Below are positions 23,317-30,647 of a stretch of 64,000 nt of DNA, piece by piece (the first letter of the stretch is position 1; each line of letters begins with the position of its first letter). The notes beneath the pieces are model-generated. The model saw only the letters and a list, made by a program, of their open reading frames with translations, searched no databases and had not been told where the DNA came from. The DNA lies in assembly GCA_000388065.2 (NCBI GenBank), contig KB932201.1. One strand, given 5' to 3'. Origin of the DNA: Fonticula alba ATCC 38817. Taxonomy: Eukaryota > Protista > Nucleariida. The translations under genes and the position numbers were made by a program.

Positions 23317-24585
23317 TCTGAGGATGTGCGCTTCCCCTTTTCTCTCTCTCTCTCTCTCTCTCTCCCCCTCTTGAGGGTGGTTCCATCTCTACTCTTGTCT
23401 GTCGCTTTCCCGTGTCCCGTTTAGGCTCAGAATATACAGTTTTATGACTCCGGTGACTCGGTNNNNNNNNNNTCTCTACTCTTGTCTGTCGCTTTCCCGT
23501 GTCCCGTTTAGGCTCAGAATATACAGTTTTATGACTCCGGTGACTCGGTCCCTCCCCCCTTGTCCTGTCTCGCTACTCTGTCATTCCATCCCCGCCTGGC
23601 AATCCCGCCTCTCTCTCTCTCTTGGTCAATGTCGTGCCATTTTTTTGAGTCTACCTCGCGACTTGCTCGGGGGGGGGGGGGGGGGGGGCGGAATCTCGAT
23701 CGCTCAAGGCGGGGGGAGGAGCGGGGGTGCATGCATTCCGCGCAACACAATCACGTGCGTGATCATGCGCCTCATCGTGGCGTGCCTCGGGCGCGGAATG
23801 CGCGCATCCCCGGAGATGGCCGTATGGCACTCCGCCCGAACACACTGCCCTGCGTCGGGCGTCTGTGGAGGGGAGGGGGGGGGGGGGGTGCTTGCCGGCT
23901 ATTGACTAACTCTTTGGGAAAAGACCAACACCCCCGGCAAGGGTCCCGACCTACAGGGGAGAGCCCGGGCATTCCTGGCTATGGGCTCCGCCAGTCTCCG
24001 CGGGGGGAGGGGGCAGGGGTGACATTCTCCCAGGGCGCCATCCCCGTTGATGGCGGTGGTGGTGGCGGTGGCGGTGGTTGAACGCCGCCCACTCTTTATC
24101 CCCCCGCTCCTGGCGATGTTGGGCTTCCTCGGGCGAGGGCCTCTGACAGGGACGCCTCCCTCTCGGTCCGAGAACAGGGCCTCTGTTGTCCCTCTGCGTT
24201 TTCTTATCGGGGTGNNNNNNNNNNNNNNNNNNNNNNNNNNNNNNNNNNNNNNNNNNNNNNNNNNNNNNNNNNNNNNNNNNNNNNNNNNNNNNNNNNNNNN
24301 NNNNNNNNNNNNNNNNNNNNNNNNNNNNNNNNNNNNNNNNNNNNNNNNNNNNNNNNNNNNNNNNNNNNNNNNNNNNNNNNNNNNNNNNNNNNNNNNNNNN
24401 NNNNNNNNNNNNNNNNNNNNNNNNNNNNNNNNNNNNNNNNNNNNNNNNNNNNNNNNNNNNNNNNNNNNNNNNNNNNNNNNNNNNNNNNNNNNNNNNNNNN
24501 NNNATTCCCTCCTCTTCCACCCCACCCCCCCTTTCTTTCTTTCTCTCCCTCTCTCCATCCTCCCCCCCCCCCCTCCCATACAACC

Positions 24586-24784
24586 ATGTCCCACTCTCAG
24601 GGCTCCCACGACGGCGACATCCTCGACATGCTGCAGAAGGCTGCCGAGGAGGGTTCCTGCGCCACGCTGTTGCACGGTGAGGACGGCCAGAGCGCCACCG
24701 TCGACGAGATCTATGCTCTGCTCGTGGCCACTAGCCATGCTGTTGAGACCACGGTTACCAAGGTACTCCCGCTCTCTCACTCAC

Positions 24785-24821
<37 letters not shown>

Positions 24822-26114
24822 CTCTCATGGGATAGGCCCCTCCCTACGTGACACTGACTCGCCGCTTCCTACTCCTGCCGTCTCTCTCTCTCTCTCTCTC
24901 TTCCCCCAACTCCCTTCTCCAGGATAGCGAGGGAAATGTCACTGGCGTTGACACGCGCCTCCTCCCGCCGACCATCGTCTCCGAGGTTGCCGCCAACTCC
25001 AGCCTGATGACCCCCACCCCACCGATGACCCCGCGCGAGAAGGAGCCCGCCACGCCGGTCGTCTATGTTGATTTTGATTCCCTGACCGAGGAGCACTTCC
25101 GGACGGTCGCCCGCAAGGTGGTCAACGAGATCAAGTCCGGTGATGTGATTGCCCGTGGCTCCGGTGCCATCAAGTCCGCGGTCCTCGGTGTCGCGGTTGT
25201 CGAGTGGATTGTCAAGTATGCCGCCAGTCTACTGGTACGTGTTTTCTTCCCTGTGGCCATCCTGCCTTTCGTCATTTGTCCCCTTTTGTCCCCTCCCCCC
25301 TCCTCCCCTGTGCCGGCTGATGTTCACCTGGCTGACTGTGATTTCTCTCTCTCTCTCTCTCTCTCCCCCCCCCCGCCCCCTCCCGCAATCTCCTACACAC
25401 AAAGGGCATGGCTGGCCACTCGATTTCCAACGAGACTGCCGTCCTGATCGCCAACCGTCTGCTCGATCTGCACTACGCCTTCCCGACTGATCTGCAGGCG
25501 ACGCAGGATTTCTCCGATGCTAAGGCTTCCTTCCGGTGGATGGGCGTGCGTGACATCCCTCCCTTCTCTCTCTCTCTCTCTCTCCCTCCATGCATCTGCC
25601 TTTTCGCCCTTCTGCTGTCCATTCCTGACGCCTCCACAACCTTCCCCTTCTACTTCTCTCCTTCTGTTCTTCTTTCTCACCTTCCCCGGTTTGTTGTCCG
25701 GTAGCCTGCCATTCTGTCCGGAGACAAGAACGCCCTCGGTGTCATGCTGTCCCTGATGCAGGAGACCCTCGAGACCAAGGCCCAGAAGGTCATGATGCGC
25801 CAGATTGAGGGGTACGCGCATGGCTACGCACCGCCGGCCTTCGCTGCTACTTGGCTGCTGACATTTGTTTGCTGTACCCTGCCCCCCTCCCTCCTCCCTC
25901 TTGCAGCACCTTCTCTGAGGAGGTTGCCACCACCTGGATTCGTGAGAATGTTGGTGGCCTTGGCACTGATACCAAGGCCGCCAAGGAGATCTTCAAGATG
26001 CTGGTCAAGCGCGGGAGTGTCAAGAAGGCCGGGCTGCTTGCCGGGGTGTATGTCTGGCCCGCCAACAAGGCTGACGCCCCGACGTCCCCCTCGTCGGATG
26101 CCTCCTCCGACTGA
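24586..26114 (+). CDS. Tandem DEP-domain protein (~314 aa)
   Basis: Exons 24586-24762, 24923-25234, 25405-25545, 25705-25811, 25907-26114. DEP1 AVLGVAVVEWIVK..SNETAVLIANRLLDLHY..DFSDAKASFRW; DEP2 GTFSEEVATTWI..KAAKEIFKMLVKRG..VYVW. An upstream gap (24215-24503) could hide further exons. Confidence 0.65.
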
Positions 26115-26269
26115 GGGCATTGTTGTATACTCCTCCTCGCGTCGGCCCTGTTGTTTAGTTTCCTTCCTTTCTCCCCTCTCGCCCTCTGCGCCCCGTTGGT
26201 GAGATCAATACACATGTGAAAAATGCAAAATTGCCCGCCAACGTGTGTGCGCCTGTGCGTGCGCATGTT

Positions 26270-26300
<31 letters not shown>

Positions 26301-26337: not shown

Positions 26338-29082
26338 CTATGTTCCCCCCTCGAAGAGGGGCTTCTCTTCCGAGGGCGGCTGGTCTGCCGGATCGGAAAG
26401 CGTATGGTCGGAGGATGGGATGGTGATGTCGGCTGGCTCGGTGGATGCTGCCCGCAGCATGTTCGGAGACCGGTAGTCCGGGCAATATTCCAGCAAACAC
26501 CGCTTGACAATGGTCCAGTGGAGACCAAGCTCGCGGGCGATGCGCTTCACTGGCATCGGCGGATGACGCGCGGCCAACTCCATCAGGGTCCGAAGCCGGG
26601 AGTCACTGAGAGCGGTGGGCGGGTTATACTCCGGGAAGTGCCTGCGAAGGTGTCCCCGTGTCGCGGTCACACTGAGACCGATTTCGGTGGCGATTTGCGT
26701 CACCGAAAGGACCGGTCTATGTGCAACCAGCTCCCCCAGGCGGCTTTGGATGTTTGACAGGAGGGCTTCCTGGCGGGCAGCCTGATAGTCGGGAAACAGC
26801 CGCCGAAGGTGCGTGGCCACAGTTTGGGGATGGACGCCAAAGTGCCGGGCGATGGCGCGAAGACTGAGTCGCCGCCGGGCCATGTCCACCAGCTCGGCCT
26901 GCTCCTGGAGGGAGGAGAAGGCCCGTGTGCTTGATCCAGGGGTCGGCGTATTCCGAGAGGACAACCCTGCGGCGGGTGAGTGGCCAGGCGAGGATACGGC
27001 GACCGGAGGAATGTCCGAGGCCAGGGTGGCCAATGAAACGGGCTCAGCACCCGAATGCGAGCCCACAAGTGAGGCCGAGACACCGTCCATCGGCTCGCCA
27101 TCGCTTGCCTGGTTGTCCAAGCTCGGGACTTCGAGGTTGTCCTGCTGGGAGCCCTCCGGGAGGGGAGGCGCCCTGTGGGGGCTTTCCATGGCCGAGGGCT
27201 GGTGCTTGGGCCGCGCATCGGCCAGCTGGTGGGACCGCGCTCCGGCAGGGGCCCGGGACAGGTGCCGCTGGAGGGTCTTTCGCACGAGGGATTCCGGCAC
27301 GAGGAGCTCATTTGCGATGGCGGCCATGGAAAATCGGGAGTCCTTGGTGCCGGTTCGGGCCAAGGTCAAAATGCGGCTCTTGATGGTCGGCGTGGCGTCG
27401 GGCAATTCGACCCGCAAGTCCGGATGGCGTCGCCGCAATCTGGCCACAATCCACAAGACGGTCGATTCGGCCAGGCCAAAGCGCTCGGTCAAGTGCGACA
27501 GCCGGGCCGCGGGCGTGCTTTGGCAGAGGCGCAAAAAATCCCGCAACTGGGCAGCCGAGAGCCACCGAGCCACCATGCCGTCATACTCCGGAAAAAGGCG
27601 ACGAACCTGCCTTCGGGCAAACGGAGCCGAGGTGCCGAGCTCCGCGGCGATGTAATTCAATGGCGGCAGGGGATTCTGCGCCAGCAGGGCCTCGAGACGT
27701 GCCTCCAGTTCGGGAGCAAGGGGACCGGCCTGGCGAGCTTTGGATTTGCCACGGGTGTTGGGGCTGGGCGTGTCCGAGCGAAGATGCGGCATATGGAGGG
27801 TAAGGTACTCGCGATACACGCCGGCCAGGCTGGCCAGCTCCAGTATGTTCAAGGTCGGGTTTTGGGCAGCCAGCTCGCCGATGCGCGCATTCACCCGCGC
27901 ACAAGGACGAGTGCTACTCGGGTGGCGATGGTCCGGGCAGAGCCGGGCGATGGCCTTGCGAACGGCCTTCTGCTCGGCCCCCAGCGCCAGAGCCATCTCC
28001 GAAACGGAGAGGATGGGATCCCGTCGGGCGCACATGGCCACCAGGGCAGCCTCATCCGCCGGTGACAGGTGCGAGGCCTGCGGCGGGGTGAAGCCCGGGC
28101 ACACGCGTGGCAGGTGCCGGAGGGCAGTCACGGCCGGGATGCCAGCACGCCGGGCCATGTCGACGACAGTGCGGCATGTTGGATCGGCAGCCGCCTGGCG
28201 AAGGGCCTCCTCTTGCGCCGGGGTTGGGATGAGGGTCCGTGCCGGGGTGAACCCCGGCACATGGAGTTGGATGTGCTTCTGGGCCACGGCCGCCGACATG
28301 CCAAGGGCATTGGAGATGTAATTCAGACTCGGGGGGAAGACCGGCTCGGCGGTCAGGCGCCGGAGCAGAGCCAGCTTCCCCGGGTCCAGGGGGCTCATTG
28401 TTGGGATGTCCTGTGTCCAGTATTCCGGAACCAGTCGCCGGAGGTGGCCGCGCGTCTGCTCGGTCGACAGGCCCACCTCGGCAGCGATGGCAGCCACCGG
28501 CAACGGGGGCCGCATCTGGGCCAGGTCCAGCAGGTGGGTCTCCTGTTCGAAGGAGAGCATGGCTGTTCGAGGCCGGAAATCCGGGAAAAGGCAGGCCAAA
28601 ATGTGGCGCACCTGGGCCAAAGTAAGGCCGACGCGCTGGCAAATGTAGCTCAATTGCGGGGGTGGGTCAAGTTGGACGAGCTCGGCCAGGGTGGCCTCTA
28701 TCTCCGGGGTGAGGGCCCGAATGACCGGCGGAGAGTACTCCGGACACAGGCGCGCCAGGTGCCACAGAGCGACCGTCGGCGAGACGCCCACCTCACGAGC
28801 GATACCATGTAGATGCAGCACCGGGTCCGTTCGTCGGCCCAAATCCTGCAGGGTATCCTGCTGGAAGAGGGTCAAATCCGACCCAGGCGGGGCCTCATGG
28901 CTGGAAAGGGCAAAAAGAGCACCTTCCCCCGGGGCAGTGGCTGTAGTAGCAGCAGTGGCAGCAGTGGTCGTGGCCAAGCGTGGCCGCTGGATGGCGGAGG
29001 GATGTGTCAGACGTGCGGGCCGCCATTCTGGGGGGGGGGGGGGGGGGGGAGGGGCGGAGGCGCGCCAAGCACAGGAATACAC
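26338..29082 (-). CDS. Protein with 13 tandem ~50-aa helix-turn-helix repeats; true start uncertain
   Basis: Uninterrupted 914-codon ORF that begins at GTG, not ATG. Recurrent unit Lxx(E)xxLxELAxxxPxLSVxxIAxELGLSxxxVRxHLxRLxP(E/D/G)(Y/F). Confidence 0.8.
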   Translation of the reverse strand: MYSCAWRASAPPPPPPPPEWRPARLTHPSAIQRPRLATTTAATAATTATAPGEGALFALSSHEAPPGSDLTLFQQDTLQDLGRRTDPVLHLHGIAREVGVSPTVALWHLARLCPEYSPPVIRALTPEIEATLAELVQLDPPPQLSYICQRVGLTLAQVRHILACLFPDFRPRTAMLSFEQETHLLDLAQMRPPLPVAAIAAEVGLSTEQTRGHLRRLVPEYWTQDIPTMSPLDPGKLALLRRLTAEPVFPPSLNYISNALGMSAAVAQKHIQLHVPGFTPARTLIPTPAQEEALRQAAADPTCRTVVDMARRAGIPAVTALRHLPRVCPGFTPPQASHLSPADEAALVAMCARRDPILSVSEMALALGAEQKAVRKAIARLCPDHRHPSSTRPCARVNARIGELAAQNPTLNILELASLAGVYREYLTLHMPHLRSDTPSPNTRGKSKARQAGPLAPELEARLEALLAQNPLPPLNYIAAELGTSAPFARRQVRRLFPEYDGMVARWLSAAQLRDFLRLCQSTPAARLSHLTERFGLAESTVLWIVARLRRRHPDLRVELPDATPTIKSRILTLARTGTKDSRFSMAAIANELLVPESLVRKTLQRHLSRAPAGARSHQLADARPKHQPSAMESPHRAPPLPEGSQQDNLEVPSLDNQASDGEPMDGVSASLVGSHSGAEPVSLATLASDIPPVAVSSPGHSPAAGLSSRNTPTPGSSTRAFSSLQEQAELVDMARRRLSLRAIARHFGVHPQTVATHLRRLFPDYQAARQEALLSNIQSRLGELVAHRPVLSVTQIATEIGLSVTATRGHLRRHFPEYNPPTALSDSRLRTLMELAARHPPMPVKRIARELGLHWTIVKRCLLEYCPDYRSPNMLRAASTEPADITIPSSDHTLSDPADQPPSEEKPLFEGGT

Positions 29083-29568
29083 ACCTTCAGAGGGGCCGAG
29101 CTGGCCGAGTCAGGGTCGTCCGCCGGGGCCCGCCTCATCTGGCAGCGGCGGCGGTGACGGCAGCAGCGGGTGACAGAGGGAACGCCAAGGGGAGAGGGAG
29201 AGACGAGGGGGATTTGCGTGATCGAGATGCTCCGGCGCAAGCGCACGGAGGCCGGGGAGGGAGAGGGGGGAGCGTGACTCGCGGGATGGGGGCCGCGGCC
29301 TGGAGCTAACGCGGCGGCTGACAAAGGCCGCTCGAGGGCCCTGCCCGGTGGTGGCACAGCCATCTCCCCAAGATCCCCTTCTGCCAGCAAAAGCGTCCTA
29401 CGCCAGCCGGCAGTACAGCGGGTGCGCGGGAGGACCACTGGATTGTTTCACCGAGAGCGGCGCTGTGAGGCCCCCCCCCCCCCCGCATGGAGTGGCGATC
29501 TCGCGGCCACCGGGCGATGCGCATTTTCCGTGGTGCTTGATATTGGATTGGAGTCCCTGGGCACCCAT

Positions 29569-29647
29569 GGTTGGATGGCCGAGTGGTTAAGGCGCCAGTT
29601 TAAGGCACTGGTGGGAAACCGCGTGGGTTCGAGTCCCACTCCAATCA
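29569..29647 (+). tRNA. tRNA-Leu(AAG), intronless, type II variable arm
   Basis: Acceptor GGTTGGA/TCCAATC+A; D-arm GCC-GAGTGGTTAA-GGC; anticodon arm CCAGT-TTAAGGC-ACTGG; T-arm GTGGG-TTCGAGT-CCCAC; followed by a T-run terminator. Confidence 0.95.
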
Positions 29648-30647
29648 AAGATTTCTTTTTCCCGCGATCGCCAGCCAGGCCGAGACGGGTCACCCGCGCC
29701 GCCGCCAGGGGGGGGGGGGCTCTTTTCGCGGAGTTCGTTTTTGCGAGTATTTTTCTTCCGCGCCCTGCGGCGGCCCGGGAGGCCGGGGCGCCGGGGGGGG
29801 GGGGGGGCACTCCGCTCCGTGGAGGAAGAATGCCCCTCGTCCCGCGGTCGGTCGCCCCATGCCAACAGACCGCCGGGCCGCATGTGGCCGAGATGACCCC
29901 CCTGGGTGGGGACGAGTCTCCGGGGGGGGGGGGGGGGGGGGGGGGGGCGGCAGGCCCACGCGCCAGGGTCCCCTTTTTTATTCGCAGCCCAGCTTGAGAG
30001 GGCCAGATGTGTAGTCTCTAGCATCCGGGCCCGGTGTAGTGGGGGTTGGCGGGCCGTTGTCCCGGCGGCCCACCTGCCAGCGGGAACCGTTGCGTTGATC
30101 CGCGATTCCCAGGCCCCGCCTCGGGCGGGCCAGGGCAGCGGGTGGCAGGGAGGGGGGGGGGGGGGGGGCACACGCGCGCACGCCCATGGTGCCCGATCCC
30201 GCGCGCCTGGGCCGGGACAGTTTCCATCGGGCCGATTGGTCGATCTGATCCCGGCGGCAGGTGCGCCTGCCGGCCGATTGGGGGGGATTCCGGCCGGTCG
30301 GCCGGCCGGAACGGAGGGGGCTCCCACCTCTCGGTTTGCGCCTTTTCCCCGCTCTTTCTTGTCCCGCCTGTCCCGCCTTCCCCCACTCATTATCGCTCTC
30401 CATCTATGGCCTCCGGCCTGCTGCGTCCTCGCCTTCCCCCGAATATTCGCGCGCCGGCCCATGTCTGGTGGGCATCAGCTTGAAAGGGATCTGTACTCAC
30501 CACCATGTGCCCTGGGCCTGGGAGCCAGACACTCCCTCCCTTGCTCACTTCTCCTCCGCTCTCTCTCCTTGTGTCTCCCCNNNNNNNNNNCCTCCCAGTC
30601 TCAAAACCTCCCTGCTTTTTTTTTGGCCTCCCTCCCCTTTGCAGACA

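What the first reader, a model, noticed from the sequence alone, without database searches (positions are those of the whole stretch)
26338..29082. Array of 13 tandem helix-turn-helix units: possible modular DNA reader
Seen: 13 divergent ~45-55-aa repeats between about 28875 and 26473, arranged as 10 units, a ~110-aa Ser/Pro linker, then 3 units. Each has a lead helix, PxLSxxxIAxxxG(L/V)S, a variable recognition helix and a conserved P(E/D/G)(Y/F) cap. Recognition helices differ: SPTVALWH, TLAQVRHI, STEQTRGH, SAAVAQKH, PAVTALRH, SAPFARRQ, HPQTVATH, SVTATRGH, HWTIVKRC. No DDE, nuclease or other catalytic motif is visible. Established: this tri-helical HTH type occurs in Psq/CENP-B, Tc1/IS-family transposase N-termini and bacterial regulators, usually in 1-4 copies. 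Inference: a lineage-specific long-site or programmable DNA-binding protein, possibly domesticated from a transposase HTH.
Basis: partly seen in the sequence, partly recalled or inferred. Interest (0 to 1): 0.8.

Follow-up and report, generated by a model that had tools for sequence, protein, structure and literature searches.

The report
Thirteen-unit helix-turn-helix array protein
A gene of the amoeba Fonticula alba encodes a 900-residue protein that is little more than 13 small DNA-binding-type (helix-turn-helix) modules strung together; it belongs to an undescribed gene family of this species, and what it binds is untested.

Summary
The window is Fonticula alba and the finding is gene H696_00212: two exons, 900 aa, minus strand.

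- **Units.** There are 13 units of about 52 aa at exactly the stated coordinates (28875-26473), arranged as 10 units, a 105-aa disordered Ser/Pro linker, then 3 units. Eleven units are strongly supported by leave-one-out profiles (21-57 bits; shuffles reach at most 11). Units 7 and 10 are degenerate.
- **Fold.** With a 17-row alignment, AlphaFold2 models units 11-13 at pLDDT 89.6 as three separate three-helix HTH domains. Single units superpose on GcrA, Tc3 transposase, Hin/resolvase, LuxR-type and Myb HTH domains.
- **No other domain.** No catalytic or other domain was found.
- **Repeat age.** The units are old and divergent (mean 25% identity, no DNA repeat). This is not a TALE-like near-identical repeat code.
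- **Relatives.** The nearest relatives are two other F. alba proteins (H696_05449, H696_04164) with the same P-(E/D)-(Y/F) cap. Earlier notes of this scan report more members on other DNA of this genome.
- **Analogues.** Uncharacterised bacterial poly-HTH arrays exist. So do TnsD-like Tn7 target selectors with 5-8 detected HTH repeats, which are the closest analogue with a known mechanism.

The most likely function is non-enzymatic binding of extended DNA sites, which is inferred and untested. Evidence of expression is weak. The transposase origin is unproven.

The parts
29085..29138 (-). Exon 1 of H696_00212: ATG plus 17 codons. It is acidic (3 Asp in the first 10 residues). Its last residue, Lys18, together with the first three residues of exon 2 gives K-R-P-R, which looks like a nuclear localisation signal.
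   Evidence: It translates to residues 1-18 of P0001. No RNA read confirms it.
28987..29084 (-). Predicted 98-nt GT..AG intron containing a 25-nt homopolymer tract.
   Evidence: Splicing is needed to join the only upstream ATG to the frame of units 1-2. The next in-frame Met is residue 161.
26338..28986 (-). Exon 2: residues 19-900 plus the TAG stop.
   Evidence: GC by codon position is 0.69 / 0.53 / 0.75, a coding-type pattern.
27241..28875 (-). N-terminal block of ten HTH units (residues 56-600). Unit boundaries, from 5' to 3': 28875-28735, 28734-28576, 28575-28420, 28419-28249, 28248-28090, 28089-27928, 27927-27757, 27735-27583, 27582-27415, 27414-27241. Units 1-3 are acidic or neutral; units 9-10 are strongly basic.
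   Evidence: Alignment A1, leave-one-out scores, coordinates, charge. Units 7 and 10 are weak.
26926..27240 (-). Disordered, acidic Ser/Pro/Ala-rich linker (residues 601-705).
   Evidence: pLDDT 25-31, composition and pI 5.06, no Pfam match.
26473..26925 (-). C-terminal block of three basic HTH units (residues 706-856): 26925-26785, 26784-26626, 26625-26473.
   Evidence: AF2 model with alignment A3: pLDDT 89.6, three helices per unit. Fold matches. pI 9.3-11.5.
26341..26472 (-). Acidic, low-complexity C-terminal tail (residues 857-900).

Best explanation
H696_00212 is a genuine, native F. alba gene. Its product is a non-enzymatic 'beads-on-a-string' array of 13 divergent tri-helical helix-turn-helix domains (11 clear, 2 degenerate), split 10 + 3 by a disordered acidic linker. 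It belongs to a Fonticula-specific family of poly-HTH proteins.

The most likely mechanism is inferred, not shown. Several of the basic units, above all units 9-13, each place their third helix in a DNA major groove. The chain would thereby read an extended or composite double-stranded DNA site. This is how the multiple C-terminal HTH domains of TnsD read Tn7 attachment sites, and how Myb repeats or paired/Tc3 bipartite domains read adjacent half-sites.

The acidic N-terminus and the K-R-P-R motif point to the nucleus rather than the mitochondrion. Each unit has its own fixed sequence, so any specificity would be hard-wired per unit, as in zinc-finger or TnsD arrays. It would not follow a simple repeat code.
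For: Shown:
- Gene identity and structure and a coding-type GC pattern.
- 13 units, 11 of them robust in leave-one-out tests.
- Pfam HTH families above their cut-offs and nothing else.
- A confident three-helix-per-unit model.
- Single-unit structural matches to DNA-binding HTH domains: GcrA Z 7.3 at rmsd 1.2 A, Tc3 Z 6.3, plus Hin, resolvase, DosR and Myb.
- Multi-unit Foldseek neighbours are tandem HTH DNA binders with low TM scores, meaning flexible inter-domain geometry.
- Core positions are conserved while surface positions vary.
- Overall pI is 9.3, with basic C-terminal units.
- Family membership: the units score best against a profile of H696_05449 and H696_04164 units (291 bits summed, against 133-257 for the bacterial groups), and they share the P-(E/D)-(Y/F) cap.

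Precedent: TnsD-like selectors carry multiple C-terminal HTH domains that recognise att sites, and deleting one such domain (about 60 aa) abolished TnsD-mediated transposition in McCAST (PMC10293859, PMC11837452). TniQ/TnsD proteins with 5-8 detected similar repeats were found here.
Against: - No binding data of any kind exist.
- Units 1-3 are acidic or neutral (pI 4.9-6.9), which is poor for DNA binding.
- Units 7 and 10 are degenerate.
- Expression rests on one 176-nt, depth-2.9 contig in a small library labelled RNA. Three other runs gave no reads and are no test.
- Exon 1, and with it the localisation argument, is only predicted.
- VIA Z-scores of 6-7 are in the range the tool warns can reflect a common arrangement.
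- HTH folds also bind RNA or proteins; SelB and Cef1 were among the hits.
Confidence: 0.55

Rival explanations
1. It is an organellar nucleic-acid-binding repeat protein. The array would work in the mitochondrion on mtDNA or mtRNA, playing an mTERF- or PPR-like role, as earlier notes of this scan proposed for other family members.
For: The paralogue H696_04164 has an Arg/Ser-rich, almost acid-free N-terminus. Earlier scan notes report mitochondrial-type leaders in several family members. Helical repeat arrays are typical of organellar gene-expression factors (established knowledge).
Against: The predicted N-terminus of this member has three Asp in its first 10 residues and a K-R-P-R motif. Those features are unlike a presequence. 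No targeting predictor was available and exon 1 is unverified.
Confidence: 0.15
2. The HTH folds are used as a protein- or RNA-binding scaffold rather than for reading DNA, as with the Cef1/CDC5 Myb domains in the spliceosome or the SelB winged helices on SECIS RNA.
For: SelB and spliceosomal Cef1 chains appear among the structural neighbours. The first three units are acidic or neutral. The long disordered acidic linker and tail suggest interaction regions.
Against: The best sequence and structure matches are overwhelmingly DNA-binding HTH domains. Helix 3 keeps basic residues at several positions.
Confidence: 0.15
3. It is a relic of a mobile element: an amplified transposase or target-selector HTH region that lost its catalytic partner and has no host function.
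For: - There are weak hits to the N-terminal double HTH of IS21 (27 bits against a 160-bit cut-off) and to IS1 and IS481.
- Pfam HTH_38 (IS30 type) and HTH_Tnp_ISL3 score above their cut-offs.
- IstA and Tc3 are structural neighbours.
- The IS630/Tc1 double HTH is nearest by shape in the Atlas, at TM 0.35-0.41.
- TniQ-linked arrays share an FPE-type cap.
Against: - No DDE/rve or TniQ domain is present.
- No terminal inverted repeats flank the gene, only homopolymer and microsatellite matches.
- No second copy lies in the window.
- The paralogues are dispersed single genes.
- The hydrophobic core is kept across 13 units at about 25% identity, which argues for long-term selection on the fold.
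- The units are not closer to TniQ arrays than to other groups.
Confidence: 0.08
4. It is a non-functional or mis-annotated ORF in GC-rich DNA.
For: Many long overlapping ORFs occur in this 64-68% GC region. RNA support is minimal.
Against: Eleven independent HTH-profile matches in one frame cannot arise by chance. GC3 > GC1 > GC2. The frame stays open for 2.6 kb.
Confidence: 0.05

Closest known systems
TnsD / TniQ-family target selectors of Tn7-like transposons (solved TnsD 8v32; PMC10293859, PMC11837452)
   Same: They carry several consecutive tri-helical HTH domains in one chain, used to read a long specific DNA site. Metagenomic members found here (P0009, P0010, P0015, P0087) carry 5-8 detected repeats of about 57 aa. 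Those repeats have the same helix layout and an F-P-E-L cap after helix 3.
   Different: The Fonticula protein has no TniQ/zinc-finger N-terminal domain and no transposon neighbours. Its units are no closer to TniQ repeats than to other HTH arrays. It is eukaryotic and has an intron.
Fonticula alba paralogues H696_05449 (P0038) and H696_04164 (P0119)
   Same: They share the unit layout and the P-(E/D)-(Y/F) cap. A profile of their units gives the best summed score to the 13 units. P0038 is also the second-best AFDB fold-cluster hit.
   Different: Only 4-6 recognisable units lie in about 745 aa, with long non-HTH stretches. Those genes are intronless and sit on other scaffolds. Identity to P0001 is about 25-27%.
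Myb/SANT repeats (R1R2R3, Reb1, SNAPc4) and paired/Tc3 bipartite HTH domains
   Same: These are three-helix units of about 50 aa repeated head to tail, each helix 3 reading an adjacent stretch of DNA. They are structural neighbours.
   Different: The Fonticula units have no conserved tryptophan triad. No Myb or Psq family is among the 25 best of 29 Pfam hits. The array has 13 units, against 2-5 in these families.
Uncharacterised bacterial or phage poly-HTH arrays (P0002-P0006, P0008, P0014, P0046; Bacteroidota DUF7317 clusters)
   Same: They have 5-15 matched HTH stretches per protein. The 'LTPE...GLP(H/Y)' group matches nearly the whole unit, profile positions 5-50.
   Different: They have other caps and other lineages. 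Profile-profile scores are equal across all groups (about 97.8%), so no specific kinship can be shown. None has a known function.
TALE / BurrH-type programmable repeats
   Same: Both are modular helical repeats proposed to read DNA one unit at a time.
   Different: TALE repeats are near-identical 33-35-aa two-helix units with one hypervariable di-residue, packed as a superhelix. Here the units are independent three-helix domains at 11-46% identity, with variation spread over all surface positions.

Membership tests
Tri-helical helix-turn-helix DNA-binding domain (Pfam HTH clan) | Sequence match to curated HTH models above their gathering scores | tested here: met
   HTH_24 53.8 bits (cut-off 21.9, 5 stretches), HTH_38 38.2 (27), HTH_Tnp_ISL3 37.3 (27.4), HTH_IclR 32.7 (22), and others.
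Tri-helical helix-turn-helix DNA-binding domain (Pfam HTH clan) | Three-helix bundle with a tight turn between helices 2 and 3 (conserved Gly) and a conserved hydrophobic core | tested here: met
   AF2 model at pLDDT 89.6 with helices of 12, 8 and 11 residues per unit. Gly in 12 of 13 units at the turn, with conserved L/I/A core columns. Z 5.5-7.3 to solved HTH domains at rmsd 1.2-2.9 A.
Tri-helical helix-turn-helix DNA-binding domain (Pfam HTH clan) | Actual binding of DNA through helix 3 | not testable with these tools
   Needs EMSA, DAP-seq, SELEX or a complex structure.
IS30 / IS21 / Tc1-type transposase | DDE (rve / DDE_3) catalytic domain after the N-terminal HTHs | tested here: not met
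   Pfam finds no catalytic family. The NCBIfam IS21 hit covers only model positions 4-95 at 27 bits, against a 160-bit cut-off.
IS30 / IS21 / Tc1-type transposase | Terminal inverted repeats and multiple genomic copies | tested here: not met
   Only homopolymer and microsatellite matches flank the gene. There is no further unit match in the 64-kb window.
TnsD/TniQ target selector | N-terminal TniQ domain with a zinc finger, and Tn7-like neighbours (TnsA/B/C) | tested here: not met
   P0001 has no TniQ hit. The domain is present in P0010, P0087 and P0015, and P0015 lies in a Tn7-like element.
Myb/SANT repeat proteins | Regularly spaced Trp/aromatic triad and a Pfam Myb_DNA-binding match | tested here: not met
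   No conserved Trp column. No Myb family among the 25 best of 29 Pfam hits.
TALE-like programmable repeats | Near-identical repeats with variation confined to one or two specificity residues | tested here: not met
   Mean pairwise identity 25.5% (range 11-46%). Entropy is as high in helix 1 as in helix 3. No DNA-level tandem repeat.
Fonticula poly-HTH family (undescribed; also noted elsewhere in this scan) | Several tandem tri-helical HTH units ending in a P-(E/D)-(Y/F) cap, in an F. alba protein without other domains | tested here: met
   The cap is present in 10 of 13 units by eye in A1; a stricter pattern finds 6. Paralogues P0038 and P0119 are verified as F. alba proteins carrying the same cap. 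Best summed profile score of all groups.
Mitochondrial helical-repeat factors (mTERF, PPR, OPR) | N-terminal presequence free of acidic residues, and solenoid packing of the repeats | tested here: inconclusive
   The predicted N-terminus has 3 Asp in 10 residues, but exon 1 is unverified. The units model as separate domains. No targeting predictor was available.

The most novel reading that the evidence does not exclude
Fonticula alba has evolved its own class of sequence-specific DNA readers: long chains of individually diverged HTH modules (13 here, reportedly up to about 20 in paralogues). Together the modules would recognise sites of several tens of base pairs. That would be a eukaryotic counterpart of TnsD-type HTH arrays, filling the niche that C2H2 zinc-finger arrays fill in animals, and a possible new modular scaffold for DNA targeting.
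Probability: 0.2. Interest if true: 0.75.

Novelty: new variant of a known kind. Interest (0 to 1): 0.55.

Why it matters
Nearly all characterised HTH proteins use one to four HTH modules. A eukaryotic family built from 13 or more, with no other domain, would be a new way of assembling long-site nucleic-acid recognition. The only mechanistic precedent is the multi-HTH tail of TnsD.

If the units bind DNA additively, the family offers a natural set of diverged modules for studying how HTH chains read long sites. It would also be a lineage-specific regulator class in a deep-branching relative of fungi. If they do not bind DNA, it is a striking case of HTH folds being reused as a scaffold.

No paper in the library searched mentions these genes.

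Tried and rejected
- **Word-indexed homologue searches.** The full protein, residues 706-866 alone, and a three-paralogue alignment each returned only the query. The last did not even recover its own input paralogues, so these blanks are uninformative.
- **Overlapping three-unit alignment (A2).** MAFFT staggered the identical segments, so I discarded it and replaced it with non-overlapping windows (A3).
- **Full-length single-sequence AF2.** Mean pLDDT 49.7, too poor for a fold search.
- **Foldseek against PDB with the three-unit model.** Nothing reached E < 0.06.
- **Profile-profile comparison across unit groups.** About 97.8% probability for every group, so no discrimination. The shared 'FPE' cap with TniQ arrays therefore cannot be called homology.
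- **RNA runs X9, X10 and X14.** No reads laid, so they are no test.
- **Search for TIRs or extra copies.** Negative.
- **Literature.** Searches by locus tag and for tandem HTH arrays found no description.
Full report
**Identity and gene structure.** The 914-codon ORF at 26338-29082 (-) is the longest in the window. A search of 5.8 billion proteins returned a single hit: Fonticula alba hypothetical protein H696_00212 (P0001, 900 aa), 100% identical over 97% of the ORF. The lister's GTG start at 29082 is not the real one. The annotated model, which I verified against the DNA, has three parts:

- Exon 1 at 29138-29085 (ATG plus 17 codons).
- A 98-nt GT..AG intron at 29084-28987.
- Exon 2 at 28986-26338, ending in TAG.

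The splice is needed because the next in-frame Met is residue 161, downstream of the well-conserved units 1 and 2. GC by codon position is 0.69 / 0.53 / 0.75, as expected for a real coding frame in this GC-rich genome. A tRNA-Leu(AAG) gene lies about 430 bp upstream.

**The repeats.** Thirteen units of 47-58 aa align in register (A1). I rebuilt a profile from the other 12 units for each unit in turn:

- Eleven units score 21-57 bits, against a maximum of 11.4 bits for 200 shuffles each.
- Unit 7 (6.6 bits) and unit 10 (10.6 bits) are not separable from shuffles.

The units are ancient. Mean pairwise identity is 25.5% (range 11-46%). Adjacent units are no more alike than distant ones, and there is no DNA-level tandem repeat. 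Conserved columns are the hydrophobic core, the turn Gly (12 of 13) and an invariant Pro in the cap. Surface positions of helix 1 and helix 3 are about equally variable. The linker (residues 601-705) is Ser/Pro/Ala-rich, acidic and disordered. The N-terminus, linker and C-terminus match no Pfam family.

**What the units are.** Pfam reports only HTH families, ten or more of them above their gathering scores: HTH_24, HTH_38, HTH_Tnp_ISL3, HTH_IclR, AsnC-type, HTH_11, MarR and others. The unit profile hits IclR, ArsR/SmtB and AsnC/Lrp HTH cores in the PDB at E from 1e-4 to 1e-2.

A single-sequence AF2 model of the whole protein is poor (pLDDT 49.7), but it shows three helices in most units. I then built a 17-row alignment of non-overlapping three-unit windows from this protein, a paralogue and bacterial arrays (A3). 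With it, units 11-13 model at pLDDT 89.6 and pTM 0.54, as three repeats of helices of 12, 8 and 11 residues.

Fold searches gave the following:

- VIA-align places single units on the GcrA DNA-binding domain (Z 7.3, rmsd 1.2 A over 44 of 49 residues), the Tc3 transposase HTH (Z 6.3), Hin, Tn3 and gamma-delta resolvase HTHs, DosR/NarL, Myb R2R3 and IstA.
- These Z values lie in the range the tool warns may reflect a common arrangement. The fold call therefore rests on their agreement with the sequence profiles.
- Whole-model Foldseek neighbours are tandem-HTH DNA binders (AraC, tandem homeodomains, DUX4, Reb1, SNAPc) and SelB. They have high rmsd and low TM scores. This points to independent domains on flexible connectors rather than a rigid solenoid.

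**Relatives.** A profile search of 1.84 billion representatives found 764 proteins at E <= 1e-3, many with 5-15 matched stretches. Thirty were looked up, and three kinds stand out.

1. Fonticula paralogues. P0038 is H696_05449 and P0119 is H696_04164. Both have the same P-(E/D)-(Y/F) cap. A profile of their ten units gives the highest summed score to the 13 units here: 291 bits, against 133-257 for four bacterial groups. P0038 is also the second AFDB fold-cluster hit. Both are dispersed, intronless genes on other scaffolds, with no further copies within 10 kb.
2. Bacterial stand-alone arrays of unknown function. P0003, P0004, P0014 and P0046 are built from 'LTPE...GLP(H/Y)' units that match profile positions 5-50. 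P0004 sits among housekeeping genes. ESM Atlas also points to multi-HTH Bacteroidota clusters (lead only).
3. TniQ/TnsD proteins. P0010 and P0087 have a full TniQ domain, P0015 and P0009 a C-terminal part of one. Each is followed by 5-8 detected HTH repeats that end in F-P-E-L. P0015 lies in a Tn7-like element. The N-terminus of P0010 matches solved TnsD at E 7e-76.

Profile-profile comparison gives about 97.8% probability to every group. I therefore cannot claim specific descent from any bacterial array or from transposases. The IS21 hit (27 bits against a cut-off of 160) is only a resemblance.

Earlier notes of this scan describe further F. alba poly-HTH genes with 5-20 units, several with mitochondrial-type leaders. 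I confirmed independently that a family exists. I could not map or census those loci.

**Mechanism.** What is shown is a non-enzymatic chain of HTH domains. What is inferred is nucleic-acid binding, most likely to double-stranded DNA, with several units engaged along an extended site. The precedent is TnsD. Its long C-terminal region folds into multiple HTH domains that recognise the attachment site (PMC10293859). Deleting one such domain (about 60 aa) abolished TnsD-mediated transposition in McCAST (PMC11837452).

Charge argues that not all units are equal. Units 1-3 have pI 4.9-6.9, while units 9-13 have pI 9.3-11.5. The predicted N-terminus has three Asp in its first ten residues, and K-R-P-R sits at the exon junction. 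This fits the nucleus better than the mitochondrion for this member, but exon 1 lacks RNA support.

Because each unit is individually diverged, specificity would be hard-wired per unit. A TALE-like code is not supported.

**Expression.** One small library labelled RNA holds a 176-nt, depth-2.9 contig at 26640-26815, across units 11 and 12. It also holds a 1066-nt, depth-88 contig from the downstream neighbour. Three other runs laid no reads and are no test. Transcription is thus only weakly supported.

**Verdict.** 'Programmable' and 'transposase-derived' remain unsupported. This is a new variant of a known kind, multi-HTH nucleic-acid binders. It is a member of an undescribed Fonticula family that this scan has also met on other DNA of the genome. 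No paper in the library mentions these genes.

Noticed in passing
window 29568-29648 (+): tRNA-Leu (anticodon AAG), about 430 bp upstream of the gene's ATG and on the opposite strand. It is the only Rfam/ARAGORN hit in the window.
   Followed up: no
window 29030-29054, 29471-29488, 29922-29947, 30148-30166; 24520-25610: There are long G or C homopolymer tracts, one of them inside the predicted intron. CT/CA microsatellites fill the intergenic DNA, and they generate all the 'inverted repeats' found.
   Followed up: partly
window 26266-26300: A (TGT)n microsatellite of about 12 copies, starting about 40 nt past the stop codon in the presumed 3' UTR.
   Followed up: no
window 25906-26230: A 1066-nt RNA-library contig (depth 88) ends on this stretch, with a 255-nt loose end at 25906. 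This suggests a spliced, well-expressed neighbouring gene just downstream.
   Followed up: no
P0010, P0087, P0009, P0015; L002 10001-11938: These are TnsD/TniQ-family proteins of 600-917 aa with 5-8 detected tandem repeats of about 57 aa ending in F-P-E-L. Some are far longer than solved TnsD (462 aa). P0015 sits in a Tn7-like element interrupted by an IS21.
   Followed up: partly
P0003, P0004, P0014, P0046, P0013; L001 8001-9506: An unnamed bacterial family of stand-alone proteins made only of 5-9 'LTPE...GLP(H/Y)' HTH units. P0004 lies among housekeeping genes.
   Followed up: partly
P0002 (957 aa), P0008 (1557 aa), P0012 (1312 aa): Metagenomic proteins that appear to consist of 15 or more HTH modules. 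Their function and taxon are unknown.
   Followed up: no
P0017 and AFDB A0A137P832 / A0A137NUY9 (Conidiobolus coronatus): A fungus, Conidiobolus coronatus, also has proteins made of about 7-9 tandem HTH units, named 'Mos1 transposase HTH domain-containing'. This is a second eukaryotic poly-HTH expansion.
   Followed up: no
window about 30600-30640: Translations show a short run of X, which indicates an assembly gap or masked Ns in the neighbouring gene region.
   Followed up: no
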